A DNA stretch of 63,778 nt, counting the filler, from Octopus bimaculoides (lineage: Eukaryota), in the NCBI RefSeq assembly GCF_001194135.2. It is 7 parts of 7 records of this genome, joined end to end, with 100 filler letters (N's around TTAATTAATTAA, not from the genome) between each part and the next. Parts side by side here need not be neighbours in the genome. Positions count along the whole stretch, not along the records: positions 1 to 24,550 come from NC_068993.1; 6 more parts are not named here. One strand, 5' to 3'. The position numbers and the translations under genes were made by a program. Shown here piece by piece: positions 625 to 23,424 of the stretch (its first letter is position 1; each line of letters begins with the position of its first letter). The notes beneath the pieces were generated by a model that made no database searches, had not been told where the DNA came from, and saw only the letters and a list, made by a program, of their open reading frames with translations.

Positions 625-1295
625 TTTATCATAAAGGATAATATCATTCATTATTTTATCAGGTCAGCACGAAAATAAAAACCTTATAGGTAAATTTTCC
701 AAATATTATATTAATAATTATATACATAATTATAACAAGGGATTGGCAAAACGCCTCAACACGCGCTTAAAGCAGACGCCAGATGACACTAAAACCATCT
801 TAAAACTCTAAAAACACAGGTTGTAATCGAACAAAAGTAAGATAATAAATTAAACTTTTGGTTAATCACGTATAAAGATCTCATTTCAAGCTAAAGGTAA
901 AAATATACCTATTGCTATTATCACAGTTGATATTCCGTTGTATAAATGTACCAGCGTCTACACATACCTATACGAGCAGCGCCGTCGCACAGCAATATGT
1001 GAACATACTTGCAAAAATATACAGTAAAAGTAGAATTTACATCTTTCTCTTCAACCACGTCATATATATCAAAATAATGCTGCAGTGAAGGCAACTTTGA
1101 TGCGGAGTAAAATTTTCATATATTAATTAAATAATAAAGGATAAAATCATTTTATCAGGAGGTCAACATGAAAATAAAAACCTTTTAGATAAATTTTCCA
1201 AATATTTTCAGCGCGTAGTGAGGCGTTTTGCCAATCCCTTCTTATAATTAAATATATAATATAATATAATATAATACACACACACACACACACGC

Positions 1296-3620: not shown

Positions 3621-5174
3621 ATACAAGCATGTATTTAGACGTCTGTAATATAATAGTTTGGCTCTCCATTGGTTGCAATGACCAATGTTCAATGTTCAGT
3701 GATCAATGGATCAGAATGCTCGTGAAATTCACGTGAATATGGTTTGGCAATCCACAGCCACGCATACTCTTAATGTAATTCTCAGGGATATTCAGCATAA
3801 CACAGAATGTGACAAGGGTGTCCCTTTGAATTACAGGTACAACTCATTTTTGCCAGCTGACGTGATTGTAGCAACGTGTCTTGCTGAATGTCACAACGAA
3901 TGCGTACATATATAAACATATATATGTACATATATATACGTACCCATGTCTATGTATATATGCGTATATATGTAAACATATGTACATGAACACATATTAT
4001 ACATATATATTTATACATTTACATATATGCACAGACAAAGACAAGCAAATAAAGAACACACACAAAGACGGAAAGCGTCACAGATGTGTGACGAAAGATT
4101 TCCGGACAATGGACATAAGATGGGAAACGAAAGGAAAGGCAAGAGAGAAATTGTAAGCAAATAATCAAGTTACCAAAGGAATAGGCGATTACATGACATA
4201 AGAAATAGCGAAAATTAGAATATAAAATATAAAGAATGAAAAAGTGGTAGAAGAACCGATGTCATGAAGAAGAGTTGAAGCAAATGCAGATTTCAAATGG
4301 CCTGTATGATAGCAAAAAAGGATGTCGATAACACAAAGTTACCACTTGCAGGCATATCTGTTCCGAATGAGAAAATTGCAGAATAAATATATCTCATAAG
4401 TTGTACGAGAAATAAATAATTAATTAAAACAATTTAAAACACTTTATATGATTAAGAAATTAAAATTATTTATAGCTCATTATAAGGTTATTCATTTGAA
4501 ACATTGGATGTGAAATCTATTTTAAATTCGGTTAAAATCAAGGTAGGTGCATATGAAGGTAGAATAGAGGAAGAAAGAAAGAACAATGACAGAAGGAGGC
4601 AGGGAAAGATAGGAAGAAGGTGTTGATGGGATGCCTAATGTCCTTTATCAGAAGTTGACAATATGCTTTTAAAAACGAGAGAAAATCGATGACATGTTAA
4701 AAGAATAGTCTTGAGAAGTTACGCGGGTGGAAGATACATAAAACAGGATGTTAAATTGAATTATTAAGAATAATTTTAAAATCATGCAACTTAAAATACA
4801 AAATGTAAAATGCATTTCAAAGTAATTCTAAAAATTAAAACTCAGCTTAATGCAATTAATATGTTATATGACTATAAAGAGAATTTTTGTATTGTTCCGT
4901 TGTGTAAAGTGATACGTGAAATAGACATTTGTGTGTGTGTGATTACAGGAAAATCAGAGCTAGCTCAGATGTTGAAGAGATCCCACTACAGAGCGTGCCT
5001 GTATAGTTAAGTAGTTTACTTCTTGCGTTCAGTCCCACGGTGCGGAACTTTGGGCAAGTGTTTTCTACCATAGCCGAAGCGTTGAGATTGGGTTTAGTGG
5101 ACGATAACTGAAACAGACACACACACACACATCTCTTTACCAGAGACCTAGCGGTCTTGTCACGTTTGAATGCT

Positions 5175-6660: not shown

Positions 6661-7815
6661 CAGGTTGCGGTGAATATATTGTCATCGAAATTACGCAAAA
6701 ATGAAAATAACACTGACGTCTCACTTTAACAGATATATTTACCAAAATTACATAAAAATATCGTGAAATACTAAAGAGTAAATTTATTCAATAAAATCGC
6801 CATTGGCTCCAACCACGGCCTCCAGACGATTTTGGAATCTCTGCAACTTAAGAGAGTTAAGTGGCCAGATGTTCGGGGTGATGTGGTTGCAGAAATTGAC
6901 TGACAGCCATTACTAGGTTCTCCTGCGTGTGTGACATGGAGTAGTGTCTTGTTGCCAGACATAGGGTCTTCCAGCAGCCATCCTCTGGACCCTACTATTT
7001 CCTTCTGGCACTTGATGTAGGTCTCCGAGTAAAGTCTGAGGCCGTGTGCGAAGATGAATGCAGGCATAACGTCGCCATCCCTAGTCATCACTCCAAACAC
7101 AATGTTGCTGACAAGATGTTTTATTTTTATCACTCTTGGTACATGTTTTGGGGACACGGCAAGCCAACGGTTGTTCTGTGTGTTCAGCATCTGATCCTGG
7201 CAGAAATTTTTCCCATATGAGAAAAACCAAATATGTTCAGTTAGTGGGGATGCTTGAGTTTGTTCAAAAGCTTCGTAGCACAGTCTTTCCTTTTGTGCTT
7301 GATGGCTTGGGGCAAAAATTGGATCTTTCACATCTTGTATGAGGAATACCGAATGTCTTCATGCACTACCTACCGGGTAAGAAACTCAGACACTCCCATA
7401 TCGCTGGCGATGGACCTGATTGAATTGGAGGGTTTGTAGTCAATCACGGCCCTTATATCACAAAACAAATTCAGTTCTTTTCTTATCAGAGCGATTAGAG
7501 TGAGTTTTCCGAGCTGCCATACCTTCGTAATCACCATTTGACTCATTCAACTCTTTCCGAATCCTGTGTACTGTCGTCATATTGACACTCAAATACTCTG
7601 AAATGTTCATATTGGAGCTTGCGATGCGAATGCCAAGCGGTACAGTATGTCATTTCCAAATTTCTAGCAGAGTTAATTACGTCATCGACGTGTATTTGTC
7701 ACAGACAGTGCCCAACTGACCCTGCTATAATTTGTAGTCGACAAATCAAAAACAAACAAAGCGCATGTGTGAAATGAAAAATGTAAAATTGTGACAATTT
7801 ACCTATCGCACCATG
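6661..7815 (-). mobile_element. Tc1/mariner-superfamily transposon fossil (maT/DD37D-like) with internal deletion
   Basis: TA-flanked degenerate TIRs (caggttgcgg..attgtc / gacaatttacctatcgcaccatg). Transposase pieces IWFFSYGKNF, TQNNRW, VFGVMTRDG, then YVWQQDTTPCH..IWPLNS fused to RFQNRLEAVVGANGDFIE*; the third catalytic Asp region is deleted, so the subfamily is inferred. Confidence 0.8.
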
Positions 7816-14502: not shown

Positions 14503-15682
14503 CGAGGATGGCTGAAAACTTCGTAGGCTGACTATGTAAGACTGGTGCTAGAGCTGTGAAATCTTACATGCATTAAATTCAAATCTTTTTATTAATAACT
14601 GCATTGTTTCTTCCTTGGTAAATTGATATCTGACTGTCCAAACAAAACTTCAAAATTAACTAGTAACGACTTCTCTTGAAAATCGACAAAATTTAGCATC
14701 CTGCTGTTACGAGGTACCTGCAGAAAAAGGATTTAGCAACCCAAGGAGATTCATGCTGACATGGTTGCTACATTAGGAGATGACACTCCAGGTTTATCTA
14801 CAGTGCATAAGTGGACAGTGGAATTTATAAGCGGAAGGGAGAATCTTAAATATAACCCAAGGTCTGGACATCCTATAACTTCCACTACCGAGGGAAACAT
14901 TGTTTGTGTTCACCACATGGTGACAAGTGATTAACTATAAATCAAACAGTCAATGCTATTAGCATATCTAGTGAGAGAGTTGAGATTATTCTGGGCAATG
15001 AACTTGGCAGGACGAAGGTTTCTGCTACGTCTTTTGATACCTGATGAAAAGTACACTAGGCTGATCACACCAGTGAAAAATCTGACGTTGTTTGAGGCAG
15101 ACTCAGCTGGTTTCCATGAACGTTTCCTAACCCGAAATGACTGTTGCCTTCATCACTTTGAGCCAGAGACAAAGAGACAATCTATACGGTGGAAATATTC
15201 TTTGCCGGCTCCAAAGAATGTCAAGGTCGTTTCATCCTCAGGGAAGGTGATGGCCTCACTTTTGGAGGATGCAAAGGGTATTGTGTTCACTGAAAAGGGC
15301 CACACTATTAATGAAGAGTAATATGCCAATTTACTGAGGCAGTTTCGAAAGGCTATCAAGAGCAAACGCCCAGGAAAATTAGCGAAAGGGGTTTTGTTAC
15401 ATGAGGACAATGCTCCAGCAGGCAAGTCTTTGGTTTCAATGGCTCCTCTACGTGACTGTGTCTTTGAACTGGTTGATCACACTCACTCTTCTTCTGTATT
15501 AGCCCCATCTGACTATCATCTGTTCCCCGACATGAAAAAAGCACTCAGCTGGGAACCAGTATCGCAGTGATGATGACGTCATATCTGCTGTTGACGAATT
15601 TTTTGACCAATAGCTTGAAAGGATTTGCTCACATCCTATGAAAGTATCTTGGCCAGCCTATAAACCTTTCAGCCAGCCCTCT
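14503..15682 (+). mobile_element. Mariner (DD34D) DNA transposon fossil
   Basis: TA-flanked imperfect TIRs (cgaggatggctgaaaacttcgtaggctg / cagcctataaacctttcagccagccctct). Broken transposase with HHFEPETKRQS, GKVMAS and LLHEDNAP-(34 aa)-APSDYHLFP; internal stops and frameshifts. Confidence 0.9.
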
Positions 15683-16088: not shown

Positions 16089-18481
16089 TAGAAAGAGGGG
16101 GAGAGAAACTACTTCTGTGCGAGTGCATGTATATCTACATTTGTGTGTACGTGTGTATATTAGTATGTTCGATGTTTCAGTTAGTGTATATATGTATATC
16201 TGTGTAATTTGTCTTTGTGTATGTACTCGCACTCTTATATAATGAATGAGTGAATAGGTATTTTTATATTTGTAAATGCATGCCTGTGTGCGTGTGAATA
16301 TTTGTAAGTCTGTGTATGTATGTTTTTGTCTTTGTGTGTGTAATTATGTGCCTGGCTAAATCCAGTAATGATAACCATTACAAAAGTCTGTTAGTCTAAC
16401 ATCATCTCGCTAACGACAGACGTCACCTCAAATACCTGCATGACTGATGAGGAAACTAATTGATTTCTTAGTTAGGCATTAGAAGTGATTATAGTACTGA
16501 TGTGATATTTAATTGTACCCTTTAACGTTTTCATTTCAAATATCGATGATATTCACTTTGACTTTCATCATTCCTAGATCGATAAAATAAGAACTAACCA
16601 AGTAATGATATCGATTTATTCCCCTATACTCCACCGGCCATATGTTTCCCCAGGAAAAATTGCAGATGTATTACACAATTGTTTATAGTTTTACGGTATC
16701 AGATGAAGTAATTAGCACATCACCTTATGTTTCTCTTGTATAGGGACTTATTATTTCTAACTTTGGTACAAGTTTATTATTTCTAACTGTGGTCCGGTGA
16801 AATTTATTTCATCGTTTCGTAGGGGATTTGAACGTAGACCTATAGAAGATATCGCCAAATACCGCAAGGCATATCATCTGATAGTCTGATAGTCTGCTAA
16901 ATGATGTGGTCCTCGTGTTTATGTCAGGAACATTATTATAGCTGTTGATGTTGTTTTCCTTTAACGTCCGCTCTGATTGAGAGAACTATAATCAAAAGCG
17001 TTCCAACCAATGTTTTACCTTCTGTTTTTATATCTAACATAGCATTATTCAATCTGTTCGTTACAATTTATTTTTAAATGACAGTTGGTTGTGATTGAAA
17101 AGATTTGGCTACTATCTCTAGTAGTTTCAGTATCTAAGTAGACCGTCCCTCGCTGGTTCCTTTTCCTAGATGTAGTTTTTACTTGCATTACTTTATATTC
17201 TGAACTTAAAACCAGATAAGGACAATTTTCTTCTTCATCCATGGTCAAAGATATAGAAAACGTTTCACTGGGTGAAACTGAAGAGCATCAGATCAAATGT
17301 ATTACGGCATTTAGCTACTGCACTTCGGGTTTTGAGTTCAAATCTAGTTCCGGTCGATACAATGACTTTTACGGAGTCGATTTTCGGCCCCCAAGAATGT
17401 GAACTCTTGTAGCAAATTTTCAAAATCTTATTGGCAGAAGAAATATATTGCTTCACTTTACTCCTTTCTCTGTCGCTATAAAGCTGTGAACCACCATACA
17501 AGAAATTTATAATGTTTGTTCTAGAAATGTAAGCTTAAAACCAAGGAAATATATTGTGTTAAGTAACTAGTCCGACGCTATTTCTGCCAAAATTTTTCAT
17601 AAAGTTTTGGTCTCGACTCCCAATAGATGACTGGTATTCAACCGAGCCATTGAAGAATCCCATACATGGTTCTGCTAGAAATTGGAGTCAAATTTCCTTC
17701 AAATTACACCATAATGTCTTAAAAATGGGAGTATACATTTAATAGTGTAGTCCTAGTCATGCAAAGACCTAGAGAAGGGCAAAATGGTCAATCTTTGGTT
17801 GGAACACTTTTGCTCCTACTCCGTGAAGGCTTTCCTAAGACTACACAACAACAACTATAACAACAACTGGTACTTAATTTATAGAGTGCCCTAGGGAGAT
17901 GAATGCGAAGTTAACCTGGACGTGATTTGGAATATGAATGCAGAGATTCTAAATGAAATACTGCACCTCCAGTGCTGTGATGTTTAACTCTTTTAACCTG
18001 TCTGAGGGAACAAGGAAGCCTCTGTGTGATTGTTGGTTATGCTAAAAATAGAAGCATGACAGATTCAAGAGTATTGTCTGCCATATTTCACAAGGAATTG
18101 GTAAACTTGAGGTAATGACAAAAGGCACTCGTTCAAGTTACTGCCTAGTAGAATATATCTTTACTAATTGTTTTAACTAATTGACTTTACTGATTAACTT
18201 TAATAATTGATTTATCTTGTGATAAATTTGTCATGTAATTTACCATTTATCTATTTTTCTATCACTTTTTCTTTTACTTAATTCCTCTGTTCCAATATTA
18301 ACCGTTTTCTTATTTAGTCATTGTTTTCCATAACAAAAACACCATTGCAATGATTTCGTATTTTTTTCCTTTGGGTTTTATGTTATCCCTATGTCAGAAA
18401 TTATTTAACAATTTGCTATTTTTGATAATTTTTCATTCTTTTTTATATTCTAATATTCTTCCCTTATTCTCTCTTATACAG

Positions 18482-18855
18482 AAAACTTCACCTGTTTATA
18501 TGCCAGCTTCTATCTCAAGAGGGACATCGGTTACTATATGATTCAACTGTATATACCTAGCATCCTTATCGTATTCTTGTCGTGGGTTTCCTTCTATCTA
18601 AATGTATCAGCTGTACCTGCACGAATATCATTAGGAATTCTAACTGTTCTTACGCTGACAACTCAAAGATCTGCAGGAATAGCAGCCTTACCTAAAGTCT
18701 CCTATATCAAAGCCATTGATGTGTGGATGGCATCTTGTCTCTGCTTCGTTTTCGCAGCACTTTTAGAGTTTGCCTTCGTTAACGTTTTGGACAGGCGATA
18801 TTTAAAGATTATTGCCTCCATGAAAGAAAACGAACTCACTGGAAAATGTCCCGAG
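18482..18855 (+). CDS. Cys-loop ligand-gated chloride channel (GlyR/GluCl-like) internal exon: end of loop C, M1, M2, M3, start of intracellular loop
   Basis: Polypyrimidine tract + tacag acceptor ending 18481, donor GAG|gtgagt at 18856. Translation (E)[105 protein letters not shown]...GKCPE carries the hallmark SWVSF, PAR-M2, [13 protein letters not shown] and LLEF motifs. Confidence 0.95.
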
Positions 18856-19594
18856 GTGAGTACACACACACACACACACACACAAATACGCATACACATT
18901 TGTTTGTTTTTATACTTCTGTTTTGTTTTGTTTTGTTTTAGAGTTACTGAGCTTTACAAATATCTGAGTGCTAAGGATCTCTGGTTCTGTGCTACAGAAT
19001 TAATGATTTGTGTCTTATAACCGAAGATATGATGTATCCACATTTATGAAAATGTTTAACTGTCAGAGGGGCAATGTGGATCATATTTCTCAATACACAC
19101 TCTCTATTGAAAATGAAGACTGACTTGCAGCACAATTTACAGTCAGCCAAAAGAAAGCTAAGTGTATGCATGTCACAATATCTAGTGTTGCTAATATCTA
19201 TCATACCTAAAAATCGTCAGCCTGGGCAATAATTCTTTCTGTTTATTGGTTTGTCCCGAAAGAAGAAGGCTGCAGCATACGGCCTTCGCAAACCATCTTT
19301 CCAAGAAGTTGTTGCATGCTACTAAGGTCATAAAGACGCACATGCCGACCTAAGAAGTCTTTAAGTGTTGTGGAGCCGAGTCAATCTGTTATTAAATACT
19401 TAAGTACTTACTACTCTCATTCTCTCTCATATCTTTTAACTTCGTTTATGGTAATGTTAGGAGTGTGTAAATAAAGCCCCCATTTCATTATGCCGGTTAC
19501 CGTCTAATGATATTGGCTAGTCAGTCAGTTTTTCGTGGTTGCATTTGGATTAGAGAGATATGATGTAGGATAAATATAATAATAACAATAACTC

Positions 19595-20949
19595 TAGGAT
19601 GGAATTTATAAATATTTAATACATCGCGACGTGCGTTTCCATAAATCATACGATTTTAACATCAGAGTCGGTATCCTCGGGATTAGTACAATATAGTCCG
19701 TATTATCCGTGGGCATCATCATTGATTCATTTCATCTGGCGATACTGTATTATTGGATTATTCACAGAGGGATGTGTATCCCTTCTTGCCAGTATGAAAG
19801 CCAATCTAGCTATGTGTGATTTCTGTATGTACTTAGTAAGGGGAGGTACGTGATGGGAGTAAAGGAAGGTATGGTAGTAATATAGGGATGGAGATGTGTG
19901 TGGTGGTGGTGGATTTATCTCCTATTCATTCTGCAGACTTTAAAGATGGTCATTCATTCAGCAGATTTAAGGATGGTAGTACATTTCTTTGTTCTATTTC
20001 ATTCAAAACCTGACTCTCTTCAATAATTTCAGAACCCAACGGCTGTTCAGCTGCTATTCAGTGGGGTTTGTTGACTAAATTGATTAATAGCACTCTTCTT
20101 GTAGTGATATTTTCATTGTTTCTATTATTATAGTGTGTATCATCTTAAACATTGGTATTTTCGCTTATCTGTTTGGATCACTTCACTATTCTATAATTTG
20201 CTACTTCTTTTCAAAATATTTTCTCAAATTTCATGAATGATATTTTGTACTTACATTGTTTACATGGTATTATTGATATCATCCCTATGCTTACAAAATA
20301 TCATTCATGGAATTTGAAAAAATATTTTGGAAAGAAATAGCAAATTATAAAATAGTGAAGGAACCCAAGCAGATAAACTGAAATACTAATCTTTAAGATG
20401 ATACACACTGTAACAATTGAAAGAGTCACTATAAGAGGGGTGGTATTAATCACTTCGGTCAACAAATCCCACTGTATAGCAACTGGCCACCTGTTGGGCT
20501 CAGAATTTATTGAAGAGAGTCAGGTTTTGAATGAAATAGAACAAAGGAATGTACCACCATCTTCAAATCCATCAAATGACTATCCCTAAAGTCTGCAGAA
20601 TGAATAGCATATAACTCCAACACCACCACACGTATCCCCATCCCCATATTACTATCATTCCTTCTTCTACTCCCATCACCTGTCTCCCGCTACCAAGTAC
20701 ATACAGAAATACACACATAGCTAGATTGACTTTCATACTGGCAAGAAGGGAAAAACATCCCTCTGTCATTCATCCACTAATGCAATATCGCCTGATGAAA
20801 TGAATCAATGATGATGATCAACTGGATGCCTACGGATAATACGGTCTATACACTGTACCAATCCAAAGGACACCGACTCTGATGTTAAAATCGTATGATT
20901 TATGGAAACGCGTGTCGCGATGTCGTAAATGTTTATGAATTCCACCCTA
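19595..20949. repeat. 1.35-kb palindrome / foldback element in the channel's last intron
   Basis: Arms about 19595-20249 and 20292-20949 are reverse complements along their length (roughly 80-90% by eye), with a spacer of about 42 nt; termini ta-gg(a/g)tgg...ccaccc-ta. Confidence 0.92.
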
Positions 20950-22524
20950 TATATGTCTATATNNNNNNNNNNNNNNNNNNNNNNNNNNNNNNNNNNNNNN
21001 NNNNNNNNNNNNNNNNNNNNNNNNNNNNNNNNNNNNNNNNNNNNNNNNNNNNNNNNNNNNNNNNNNNNNNNNNNNNNNNNNNNNNNNNNNNNNNNNNNNN
21101 NNNNNNNNNNNNNNNNNNNNNNNNNNNNNNNNNNNNNNNNNNNNNNNNNNNNNNNNNNNNNNNNNNNNNNNNNNNNNNNNNNNNNNNNNNNNNNNNNNNN
21201 NNNNNNNNNNNNNNNNNNNNNNNNNNNNNNNNNNNNNNNNNNNNNNNNNNNNNNNNNNNNNNNNNNNNNNNNNNNNNNNNNNNNNNNNNNNNNNNNNNNN
21301 NNNNNNNNNNNNNNNNNNNNNNNNNNNNNNNNNNNNNNNNNNNNNNNNNNNNNNNNNNNNNNNNNNNNNNNNNNNNNNNNNNNNNNNNNNNNNNNNNNNN
21401 NNNNNNNNNNNNNNNNNNNNNNNNNNNNNNNNNNNNNNNNNNNNNNNNNNNNNNNNNNNNNNNNNNNNNNNNNNNNNNNNNNNNNNNNNNNNNNNNNNNN
21501 NNNNNNNNNNNNNNNNNNNNNNNNNNNNNNNNNNNNNNNNNNNNNNNNNNNNNNNNNNNNNNNNNNNNNNNNNNNNNNNNNNNNNNAGAAAAGAATATGT
21601 AGAAGCGTGTAGTATCAGTACAGGTATCGAGTGTAAACCACGTGGTAGCCTTTGCAAGAAATCTGTGTCTGGGTGGCGAATGGATCATCAGTGGATCATA
21701 TATCCGGAAAAAAGTGCGAATATGTATTGAAATTTCCTCTATGTTAGAGAATGAAAAAATAAACCGAGTGGAAATTCTTAAAAGATGTGTGTGTGTGTGT
21801 GTTTGTACGTGCGTGTGTTTGTGTGTGTGTATGTGTGTGTGTGTGCGTGTGTTTTTGTGTATGTGTCGGTGTGTGTGTGTGTGCCTGCGCGTGTGTGATG
21901 TGGAAATTATTCAAGGTGTCAAGAATTACTGCACCGAGTAAATTTATGTGCTTTGTAAAATGTCGGACTGATCTTTCTTTGCTGATCAAGGGACAACAAT
22001 TGACATATGTTTCGGTTTATTTGGCCTCATCAGCATAAAATGTTGTCATTGAGTCTGTAAAAATATGCAAAATATTCCTTAAACAATTTAAGTAAACCTT
22101 TTTTCTGTATGTTTAAACCTATACACTGAGCTGCTGTCTAGGCTAGACTGTACACTACTGGTGATCTAGAATGAGCTGAAACAGATATCAATGAATATCT
22201 CTTCAAAATAAAGGTTAAACTCTCCTTTCCTTAAAGATGTACTATGAAAATTATTTTTGAATTATCTCCCCTTCTTATAGAGACCCGATATCAATTGTCA
22301 CTGGGTTTACGTTTACGAAAGAAATGACAATAAATAAATTATTTATTATATACAGCTTTTTGACATGATCTTTATAGTTTAATTAATCAAATTCATAGAT
22401 CTCTTTTACATAAACGTATTTATATGTACATGAACATAGTATAAACATACTTTTATACATACATACGTATACATACGTACATACATACATACATACATAC
22501 ATACATACATACATACATACACAT

Positions 22525-22629
<105 letters not shown>

Positions 22630-22847
22630 AATGGGTAACAAAGATGTACAGGTGTCAATTCATTGCGGCCATTTCAAGCGACTCCTTTAATTGATTAATG
22701 AAGACATTACATCATTGCAAAGAAACCGTTTTCGTCAGATGACTGTATAGACTTCACAGACAAAGAACAAACCAATTGCTTTAACATATTCGTATCACCA
22801 CCGGAGCTCAAATATTTACATTGATTCTGCCTTTATATCTTTATAAC

Positions 22848-23168
22848 AGGCGGGTGGCTTCGAGGCTAGGGCATTCGGCTCACGATTATAAGGTCGTGAG
22901 CTTAAATACCGGTGACGCGTTGTGTCCTTGAGCAAGACACTTTATTTCACACTTCTCCAGTTCACTCAGCTGGCAAAAATGAGTAGTACCTGTATTTCAA
23001 AGGGCCAGCCTTGTCACACTCTGTGTCACGTTGAATCTTCCCGAGAACTACGTTAAGGGTACACGTGTCTGTGGAGTGCTCAGCCACTTGCACGTTAATT
23101 TCACGAGCAGGCTGTTCCGTTGATCGTATCAGCTGGGGCCCTCGTCGTTGTAACTGATGGAGTGCTCC
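22848..23168 (+). mobile_element. Third SINE family (copies 53110-53415 on +, 3700-3895 on -)
   Basis: Shared gttgtgtccttgagcaagacactttatt..cagctggcaaaaatgagt..gagaactacgttaag..cacttgcacgttaatttcacgagcagg. Confidence 0.75.
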
Positions 23169-23253
23169 TTTATATATATATAATGTACATGCATACCTAT
23201 ATATAAATGTGTGTGTGTTTTTGATTGTAATTCTATTTCTTATTCTATTTCAG

Positions 23254-23424
23254 GTTAATGACAGAGTCAAATCAAAGCGATTTAAGTGGATTCGTGACCC
23301 CAGGGGTCAACAGAAGGCAGCATATATTGATTTTTTGGCTCGGATAACTTTTCCAATAGCCTTTGGTATATTCTGTATAATATATTGGCTTGTATATGGA
23401 GTAGTTGGGGTGAAAGAAGAATAA
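23254..23424 (+). CDS. Terminal exon (end of M3-M4 loop, M4, stop) of the same Cys-loop chloride channel
   Basis: Acceptor ttctatttcag ends 23253; phase 0 matches the donor at 18855. VNDRVKSKRFKWIRDPRGQQKAAYIDFLARITFPIAFGIFCIIYWLVYGVVGVKEE* contains the typical ID..AR..FP..F......YW M4 signature. Confidence 0.9.
   Translation, partial: VNDRVKSKRFKWIRDPRGQQKAAYIDFLARITFPIAFGIFCIIYWLVYGVVGVKEE

What the first reader, a model, noticed from the sequence alone, without database searches (positions are those of the whole stretch)
19595..20949. 1.35-kb intronic palindrome just downstream of the pore-coding exon: candidate ADAR-recruiting dsRNA
Seen: two arms of about 655 bp (19595-20249 and 20292-20949), reverse-complementary almost to the centre with a spacer of about 42 nt. 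The element is TA-flanked, contains no recognisable ORF, and starts 740 nt after the M1-M3 exon donor. Established: coleoid cephalopods recode neural transcripts by A-to-I editing very extensively, and mammalian Gabra3 M3 editing is boosted by a downstream intronic stem-loop (editing inducer element). Inference: a foldback transposon derivative that forms a roughly 650-bp duplex in the pre-mRNA could act as a TE-derived editing inducer, a splicing modulator or an endo-siRNA source for a Cys-loop channel. This is the best candidate for an undescribed system in the window.
Basis: partly seen in the sequence, partly recalled or inferred. Interest (0 to 1): 0.72.

Follow-up and report, generated by a model that had tools for sequence, protein, structure and literature searches.

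The report
Old intronic inverted duplication, probably inert
The 1.35-kb palindrome is real and lies in the last intron of a glycine-receptor-like channel gene, but it looks like an ordinary, neutrally decaying inverted duplication, and nothing in the sequence shows it was shaped to recruit RNA-editing enzymes.

Summary
Observation confirmed. The arms are 19595-20249 and 20292-20949 with a 42-nt spacer. They are 86.8% complementary at aligned positions (83% counting gaps). The predicted RNA hairpin has about 580 bp and -847 kcal/mol. The element starts 740 nt after the donor of the M1-M3 exon and lies inside the last intron; the M4 exon is at 23254-23424. It has no coding potential.

New findings:
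- A related species' contig (L001) carries the left arm at the identical position, so that arm predates the species split.
- The two arms resemble each other far more than either resembles the ortholog (unique-site counts 7, 8 and 28). The present pair therefore arose, or was homogenised, after the split.
- Mismatch is uniform along the arms.
- The + and - strand RNAs fold equally well, and G.U versus A.C mismatches are balanced.
- The arm is no better conserved than the flanking intron.
- The upstream exon shows no unusual structure.

The duplex would very probably be a passive ADAR substrate, as long inverted repeats generally are. The editing-inducer, splicing and siRNA roles are unsupported. 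Transposon origin is plausible but unproven. A 624-N assembly gap starts 14 nt after the right arm. Interest is low to moderate.

The parts
19595..20249 (.). Left arm of the inverted duplication (655 nt). It starts TAGGATGGAATTT. This arm is ancestral: it is present at the same site in ortholog contig L001.
20250..20291 (.). Non-palindromic 42-nt spacer (the hairpin loop). It contains a small internal hairpin around TGATATCA.
20292..20949 (.). Right arm (658 nt), the reverse complement of the left arm at 86.8% of aligned positions. It keeps a 12-nt segment (CATCCAGTTGAT) that the left arm has lost and that the ortholog L001 also has.
19595..19724 (.). CpG-rich outer patch of the left arm: 9 CpG, observed/expected 2.0. 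The mirror patch is at 20820-20949 (observed/expected 1.6). The inner 525 nt of the arms have observed/expected about 0.25.
19924..19977 (.). 28-nt tandem duplication inside the left arm. It is mirrored in degenerate form in the right arm, so it is older than the arm pair.
18482..18855 (+). Upstream exon encoding pre-M1 to M3 of an anion-selective (PAR motif) Cys-loop channel, closest to glycine receptor alpha. GTGAGT donor at 18856.
18856..23253 (+). Host intron, 4398 nt as assembled including 624 N, phase 0. It contains the palindrome.
23254..23424 (+). Last exon (M3-M4 loop end, M4, stop codon), in frame with the exon that ends at 18855.
20963..21586 (.). Assembly gap (624 N) beginning 14 nt after the right arm. 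The true right flank is therefore unknown beyond TATATGTCTATAT.

Best explanation
This is an old, non-coding inverted duplication that is decaying neutrally inside the last intron of a glycine-receptor-alpha-like channel gene.

The left arm already occupied this exact position before the window's species separated from the species sequenced in Logan run SRR11869391. The two present arms, however, last shared an ancestor only about half as long ago as that separation. So the pair was produced within the window's lineage in one of two ways:
- (a) a snap-back or template-switch inverted duplication of roughly 655 nt of pre-existing intron (or resident transposon) sequence; or
- (b) a whole-arm homogenisation (arm-to-arm conversion) of an older foldback-type element.

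I rate (a) slightly above (b). Since then the arms have drifted apart evenly to 13% mismatch.

When the gene is transcribed, the arms must fold into a hairpin of about 580 bp with mismatches every 10-50 bp. By general ADAR biology such a duplex is promiscuously edited and then discarded with the intron lariat. I infer that this happens as a by-product. There is no sign that the structure has been selected or that it acts on the M1-M3 exon.

Shown: the anatomy, the intronic position, the ancestry of the left arm, the relative age of the arms, and the absence of any strand-specific or conservation signal. Inferred: the mutational mechanism, the ADAR editing and the lack of function.
For: Anatomy and fold.

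Orthology of the left arm: the related contig L001 (exon 95.5% identical at the DNA level, protein 99%) aligns without a break across the left boundary (window ...AACTC|TAGGATGGAATTTAT; L001 ...GATTC|TAGGAGGGAATTTAT) and runs about 209 nt into the arm.

Relative age of the arms: in a three-way alignment of 195 ungapped columns, 28 sites are unique to L001, 7 to the left arm and 8 to the right arm (binomial 7 vs 28, p = 5e-4). The arm-to-arm Jukes-Cantor distance is 0.146, against 0.21-0.30 for window versus L001.

Single event: mismatch density is uniform along the arms (chi-square p = 0.68).

Real divergence, not artefact: 54 transitions to 31 transversions and few indels. The right arm and L001 share 12 nt that the left arm has lost.

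No RNA-level selection: the + and - strand folds are -847.0 and -847.8 kcal/mol. There are 28 G.U-compatible against 26 A.C-type transition mismatches on the transcribed strand. The arm is conserved like the flanking intron (77.7% vs 75.5%).

The mechanism operates locally: the same intron in L001 carries a perfect 27+27-nt palindrome whose left half replaces unrelated ancestral sequence, a textbook template-switch event (PMC5453318, PMC8794818).

Passive ADAR substrate: octopus has the highest hyper-editing signal among 19 species and an unusually high density of long, near-perfect dsRNA-forming loci (PMC5625713). Squid intronic editing overlaps repeats (PMC9068888).
Against: Only about 209 nt of one arm is available from one other species, so it is unknown whether that species has a right arm.

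The age argument assumes similar substitution rates in the two lineages. A roughly four-fold faster L001 lineage would mimic it.

The sharp 5'-TAGG...CCTA-3' ends, a 5/8 match of the flanking 8-mers (chance about 0.04 before correcting for the several lengths tried) and a CpG-rich subterminal patch look transposon-like. They would fit a true mobile foldback element better than a random duplication.

Arms that are more alike than expected are also what selection for pairing would produce.

No RNA data could be examined, so function cannot be excluded.
Confidence: 0.6

Rival explanations
1. Editing inducer element: the hairpin recruits ADAR to the pre-mRNA and raises site-selective editing in the adjacent M1-M3 exon, as the intronic hairpin of mammalian Gabra3 does.
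For: A very stable long duplex lies in the same pre-mRNA, 740 nt from the exon. EIEs work regardless of sequence and of whether they sit upstream or downstream (PMC5654063, PMC3479170). The left arm has persisted since before a species split. The arms are more alike than neutral expectation, which maintenance of pairing could explain.
Against: The two RNA strands fold with equal stability and there is no G.U bias. The arm shows no conservation above the flanking intron. The exon has no excess local structure (z = -0.09), although cephalopod recoding sites generally lie in structured coding sequence. Known EIEs are 60-150 nt long and 32-220 nt from the site (PMC5654063). Long dsRNA-forming loci are very common in octopus (PMC5625713), so proximity to one neural exon is unremarkable. 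It is not known whether this exon is edited.
Confidence: 0.08
2. Simple foldback or long-TIR non-autonomous DNA transposon that inserted as a unit and whose arms have diverged independently ever since.
For: Sharp symmetric ends TAGGR...YCCTA that resemble hAT-type YARNG termini (from my own knowledge of Ac/hobo ends). TA at both ends and a 5/8 match of the flanking 8-mers. No ORF. A TE-rich neighbourhood with a mariner transposase fragment and SINE-like repeats. Foldback elements such as Galileo have long TIRs that are 98-100% identical within a copy (PMC3573991).
Against: The left arm is present at the orthologous site, so the insertion would predate the split. The arms should then be at least as diverged as the orthologs, but they are about half as diverged, and left-arm-unique changes number 7 against 28 for L001. 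No other copy or solo arm exists in the 24.5-kb window. The target-site duplication is not significant once the lengths tried are allowed for.
Confidence: 0.12
3. Assembly artefact: a chimeric or hairpin read, or a mis-join next to a gap, created a false palindrome.
For: A 624-N gap begins 14 nt after the right arm. Palindromes are a known product of some library and assembly errors (from my own knowledge).
Against: The arms differ at 13% of sites with a transition bias of 54:31 and only 7 indel events. The right arm retains ancestral states (7 sites plus a 12-nt segment) shared with L001 and lost from the left arm, so it is not a copy of the same reads. Arm, spacer and arm are contiguous without N.
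Confidence: 0.03
4. Hairpin-RNA (endo-siRNA) locus: Dicer processes the duplex into small RNAs.
For: The structure resembles Drosophila hpRNA loci (the comparison is from my own knowledge).
Against: A survey of 32 molluscs including O. bimaculoides found no siRNA-type Dicer or Ago, and siRNA-like reads at least five-fold below species that make siRNAs (PMC12479628). The Rfam hits are only generic hairpin matches to plant miRNA models, far below threshold.
Confidence: 0.02
5. Splicing modulator: the hairpin shortens the effective intron or hides or brings together splice signals of the last intron.
For: It removes about 1.3 kb from the linear path between the donor (18856) and the acceptor (23253). 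Complementary (AC)n at 18862-18898 and (TG)n at 21786-21902 flank it.
Against: No splice site or branch region lies inside or next to the stem. There is no conservation signal. Nothing here could test it.
Confidence: 0.04

Closest known systems
Inverted repeat pairs in human introns and 3' UTRs (inverted Alu pairs), the main promiscuous ADAR substrates
   Same: Two inverted copies a few hundred bp long, about 85-90% complementary, inside one pre-mRNA. They form a long imperfect duplex that has no protein-coding role.
   Different: The arms here are not shown to belong to a dispersed repeat family. The spacer is only 42 nt, so the whole thing is a single palindromic unit. Editing was not measured.
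Editing inducer elements (Gabra3, GluA2 and others; PMC3479170, PMC5654063)
   Same: An intronic stem-loop downstream of an exon that encodes the pore region of a Cys-loop or glutamate receptor.
   Different: It is about ten times longer (1355 nt vs 60-150 nt) and lies further away (at least 740 nt vs 32-220 nt). No edited target site is known. It shows no conservation above background and no strand-specific pairing signal.
Foldback-type or long-TIR DNA transposons (Drosophila FB, Galileo, Tetris; PMC3573991, PMC4079207)
   Same: The element is almost entirely two long inverted arms with a short loop, sharp ends and no ORF. Arms within one copy are more alike than expected from the copy's age.
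   Different: No family, no clear target-site duplication and no tandem-repeat-built arms (only one 28-nt duplication). The left arm is fixed in two species, so there is no evidence of mobility.
Template-switch or snap-back inverted duplications (PMC5453318, PMC8794818, PMC8604942)
   Same: An inverted copy lies directly next to its template across a short spacer. One arm is ancestral. The arms coalesce after the species split. A small perfect example (27+27 nt) lies in the same intron of the related species.
   Different: The described events are mostly tens of nt, whereas this would be about 655 nt. The junction on the right side is hidden by the assembly gap, so microhomology cannot be checked.

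Membership tests
Foldback / long-TIR non-autonomous DNA transposon | Long terminal inverted repeats make up most of the element, and there is no transposase ORF | tested here: met
   Arms of 655 and 658 nt out of 1355 nt. No ORF over 77 aa and no Pfam or protein hits.
Foldback / long-TIR non-autonomous DNA transposon | Target-site duplication flanking the ends | tested here: inconclusive
   The TA at each end is part of the repeat. The outer flanks are TC and TA. The 8-mers AATAACTC and TATATGTC match at 5/8, with a chance probability of 0.044 before allowing for the 9 lengths and 4 offsets tried.
Foldback / long-TIR non-autonomous DNA transposon | Multiple dispersed copies (a family) in the genome | not testable with these tools
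   No eukaryotic genome DNA search is available. There is no other copy in the 24.5-kb window. The translated-ORF search and the metagenome scan were both empty.
Foldback / long-TIR non-autonomous DNA transposon | Arm-to-arm divergence equals the time since insertion (the arms evolve independently after insertion) | tested here: not met
   The left arm predates the species split, yet the arms are half as diverged as the orthologs. Unique-site counts are 7, 8 and 28.
Editing inducer element (EIE) | A stable long intronic stem-loop in the same pre-mRNA, near an exon | tested here: met
   -847 kcal/mol and 579 arm-to-arm pairs, 740 nt from the donor.
Editing inducer element (EIE) | An efficiently edited site in the neighbouring exon whose editing depends on the element | not testable with these tools
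   No RNA-seq or editing tables could be mapped. The exon fold z-score of -0.09 gives no hint of an editing hairpin.
Editing inducer element (EIE) | The stem is conserved across species and is itself edited | tested here: inconclusive
   The left arm is present in one related species, but its conservation (77.7%) equals that of the flanking intron (75.5%). The right arm in that species is unknown. No A>G excess is seen between L001 and the window, and the L001 contig carries unspliced intron.
Template-switch / snap-back inverted duplication | The inverted copy abuts its template across a short spacer | tested here: met
   42-nt spacer.
Template-switch / snap-back inverted duplication | One arm is ancestral and the other is lineage-specific | tested here: inconclusive
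   The left arm is ancestral and the arms coalesce after the split. Absence of the right arm in the other species cannot be checked, because contig L001 ends inside the left arm.
hpRNA / endo-siRNA locus | The host has an siRNA pathway and the hairpin yields 21-23-nt duplex small RNAs | not testable with these tools
   The literature reports no siRNA-type Dicer or Ago and no endo-siRNAs in molluscs (PMC12479628). Small-RNA data are not available here.

The most novel reading that the evidence does not exclude
The hairpin is kept double-stranded by repeated arm-to-arm homogenisation that selection favours, because the long intronic duplex concentrates ADAR on the pre-mRNA of a glycine-receptor-like channel and boosts recoding of its pore-lining exon. 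That would make it a duplication- or transposon-derived editing inducer in a cephalopod. The excess similarity of the arms relative to the ortholog (7 and 8 vs 28 unique sites) is the only observation that leans this way, and neutral duplication or conversion explains it equally well.
Probability: 0.05. Interest if true: 0.7.

Novelty: new member of a known kind. Interest (0 to 1): 0.25.

Why it matters
If the neutral reading is right, this locus is one more of the many long dsRNA-forming inverted repeats that make octopus transcriptomes heavily hyper-edited. Its value is then mainly as a dated example: one arm is older than a species split and the pair is younger, and a small template-switch palindrome in the same intron of the sister lineage shows how such hairpins are born.

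If it did act on the neighbouring exon, it would be the first editing inducer described outside mammals. It would also link de novo hairpin birth to channel recoding. No current evidence supports that.

Tried and rejected
(1) Copy number through proteins. I joined all 32 stop-to-stop frames of at least 28 aa from both arms into one query against 5.8 billion proteins, hoping for spurious ORFs called on Logan contigs. Nothing scored at E <= 1. The longest frame against 1.84 billion representatives gave only a tandem-repeat pseudo-protein at 21% identity. This says nothing about copy number.

(2) An exact-pattern scan of JGI metagenome contigs with a degenerate 31-mer conserved in both arms and L001 found 0 hits.

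(3) Rfam at gathering thresholds and ARAGORN over the whole piece found nothing. Rfam in permissive mode gave only generic hairpin matches to plant miRNA models, far below threshold.

(4) I looked for the arm ends elsewhere in the window with 3 mismatches, and for TIRs around the mariner-like fragments. There is no link.

(5) Species identity. The run accession is not in the paper library. The protein hits carry no cephalopod names. The 'octopus' attribution therefore stays unverified; the best named relatives are bivalve glycine-receptor-like proteins.

(6) More distant homolog loci (L002-L008, about 73% exon identity) have no hairpin downstream of the equivalent exon within their short contigs. 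They are too distant and too short to be informative.

(7) Subterminal repeat motifs in the CpG-rich outer 130 nt: no exact repeated 7-mers.

(8) Patchy gene conversion is rejected as the sole process, because mismatch density is uniform.

Full report
**1. Observation.**

The repeat finder reports five collinear inverted blocks that together cover 19595-20249 and 20292-20949, with 42 nt between the innermost arms. A gapped alignment of the left arm against the reverse complement of the right arm has 557 matches, 85 mismatches and 29 gap columns. That is 83% overall and 86.8% at ungapped positions. BLASTN scores it at 688 bits, E = 0.

As RNA the 1355 nt fold into a single hairpin of -847 kcal/mol. 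It has 579 arm-to-arm pairs and a longest uninterrupted helix of 52 bp.

The longest open frame is 77 aa. None of the frames hits Pfam or any protein in two very large collections.

Two details need correcting:
- The 'TA flank' is the first dinucleotide of the repeat itself. The bases outside are TC and TA.
- A 624-N assembly gap starts 14 nt after the right arm.

**2. Context.**

Exon 18482-18855 (+) encodes pre-M1 to M3 of an anion-selective Cys-loop subunit: Pfam PF02932 at 4e-30, a PAR motif, and closest solved relatives among glycine receptor alpha subunits at 2e-44. It ends in phase 0 at a GTGAGT donor.

An exon with an AG acceptor at 23252-23253 continues the frame from 23254 through M4 to a stop codon at 23422-23424. 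The palindrome therefore lies inside the last intron (18856-23253) and begins 740 nt after the donor.

The neighbourhood is repeat-rich. It holds a mariner transposase fragment at 14953-15321, a SINE-like element at about 22850-23150 with an inverted 82% partner at 3701-3865, and many microsatellites. I could not verify that the source is an octopus. The named protein relatives are molluscan.

**3. Comparative evidence.**

The only close relative in the protein collection, P0001 (99% identity), lies on a 1472-nt Logan contig from run SRR11869391 (L001). L001 aligns to window 18268-19828:

| Segment | Identity, window vs L001 |
|---|---|
| Exon | 95.5% |
| Upstream intron | 86% |
| Downstream intron | 75.5% |
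| Arm | 77.7% |

The alignment runs without a break across the left boundary of the palindrome and about 209 nt into the left arm. The left arm was therefore already at this site in the common ancestor, and it is no better conserved than the surrounding intron.

**4. Age of the arm pair.**

I aligned the left arm, the reverse-complemented right arm and the L001 arm over 195 ungapped columns. 28 sites are unique to L001, 7 to the left arm and 8 to the right arm.

If the two arms had evolved independently since before the split, changes unique to the left arm and changes unique to L001 should be about equal. They are not (p = 5e-4). The Jukes-Cantor distance is 0.146 between the arms, against 0.21-0.30 between the species. 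Mismatch density is uniform along the arms (chi-square p = 0.68).

The arms therefore coalesce at roughly half the age of the species split, probably through one event. That event was either an inverted duplication of pre-existing sequence or a whole-arm homogenisation of an older palindrome. The caveats are the clock assumption and the fact that only about 209 nt from one other species is available.

**5. It is not an artefact.**

Differences between the arms are mostly substitutions, 54 transitions to 31 transversions, with few indels. The right arm also keeps 7 ancestral states and a 12-nt segment that L001 has and the left arm has lost. So it is an independent evolutionary copy, not the same reads assembled twice.

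**6. Tests for selection on an RNA structure.**

- The transcribed (+) strand and the antisense strand fold equally well, -847.0 and -847.8 kcal/mol.
- Among transition mismatches, 28 give G.U wobble and 26 give A.C on the + strand.
- The arm is conserved like neutral intron.
- The upstream exon folds no better than shuffled sequence, z = -0.09.

None of these points to an RNA-level constraint. The complementarity looks like a DNA-level inheritance.

**7. Mechanism.**

A direct hint comes from the sister lineage. In the same intron, about 140 nt upstream of the arm boundary, L001 has a perfect 27+27-nt palindrome with a 2-nt spacer. Its right half is orthologous to window sequence, and its left half replaces unrelated sequence. 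This is the signature of a template-switch mutation (PMC5453318), a process shown to create and maintain hairpins (PMC8794818) and to homogenise inverted-repeat arms (PMC8604942). It shows the process acts at this locus, although on a scale 25 times smaller.

Transposon-like features remain: sharp TAGGR...YCCTA ends, a 5/8 match of the flanking 8-mers, and an outer 130 nt with CpG observed/expected of 1.6-2.0 against about 0.25 for the inner arms. Foldback elements are also known to keep the TIRs of one copy 98-100% identical (PMC3573991). A foldback element re-homogenised after the split is therefore a live alternative. The two sub-hypotheses cannot be separated without the right-hand side of the ortholog and a genome-wide copy count.

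**8. What it does.**

Any transcript of this intron will contain a duplex of about 580 bp. Long imperfect duplexes are the generic ADAR substrate. Octopus shows the strongest hyper-editing signal among 19 metazoans and an unusually high density of loci able to form long, near-perfect dsRNA (PMC5625713). In squid, intronic and ubiquitous editing overlaps repeats, whereas neural recoding lies in coding sequence (PMC9068888). So the hairpin is very probably edited, as a by-product.

The inducer hypothesis is mechanistically possible, since EIEs act independently of sequence and side (PMC5654063, PMC3479170). But described EIEs are 60-150 nt long and 32-220 nt from their site and are conserved. 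Here nothing beyond proximity supports it. The siRNA option conflicts with the reported absence of an siRNA pathway in molluscs (PMC12479628).

**9. Verdict.**

The best reading is a neutral inverted duplication or foldback remnant that acts as a passive dsRNA source (confidence about 0.6). It is a new instance of a known kind, of low to moderate interest. Its most instructive feature is its datable two-step history.

Noticed in passing
L001:1072-1127 (orthologous to window ~19400-19459): The related species' contig has a perfect 27+27-nt palindrome with a 2-nt spacer in the same intron. Its right half is orthologous to window sequence and its left half replaces unrelated sequence, which is the signature of a lineage-specific template-switch mutation.
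   Followed up: yes
window 19595-19724 and 20820-20949: The outer 130 nt of each arm holds 9 CpG (observed/expected 1.6-2.0). The inner 525 nt has observed/expected of about 0.25 and the flanking intron 0.5-0.8. The patch is also CpG-rich in L001. It could be a transposon subterminal region or an unmethylated island; this is unexplained.
   Followed up: partly
window 20963-21586: A 624-N assembly gap begins 14 nt after the right arm, so the right junction of the palindrome and the true intron length are unknown.
   Followed up: partly
window 22850-23150 and 3701-3865: A SINE-like element sits just upstream of the M4 exon. It has an inverted partner at 82% identity about 19 kb upstream (165 nt aligned). 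If both lie in one pre-mRNA, they form a second potential dsRNA.
   Followed up: no
window 18862-18898 and 21786-21902: An (AC)n tract directly after the exon donor and a (TG)n tract after the gap are complementary (about 37 nt at 76-88%). They bracket the palindrome.
   Followed up: no
window 14953-15321 (+) and 6771-7331 (-): A mariner-type transposase fragment (PF01359; best relatives 50-65% identical). A second 186-aa ORF looks like a DDE transposase remnant by eye but has no Pfam hit.
   Followed up: partly
window 703-771 and 1206-1272: Another small inverted repeat: 69 nt, 87% identical, with a spacer of about 435 nt.
   Followed up: no
window 18784-18855 + 23254-23355: The M3-M4 intracellular loop implied by joining the two exons is only about 45 residues, which is short for a glycine-receptor-like subunit. 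A further small exon in the intron or in the gap cannot be excluded.
   Followed up: no
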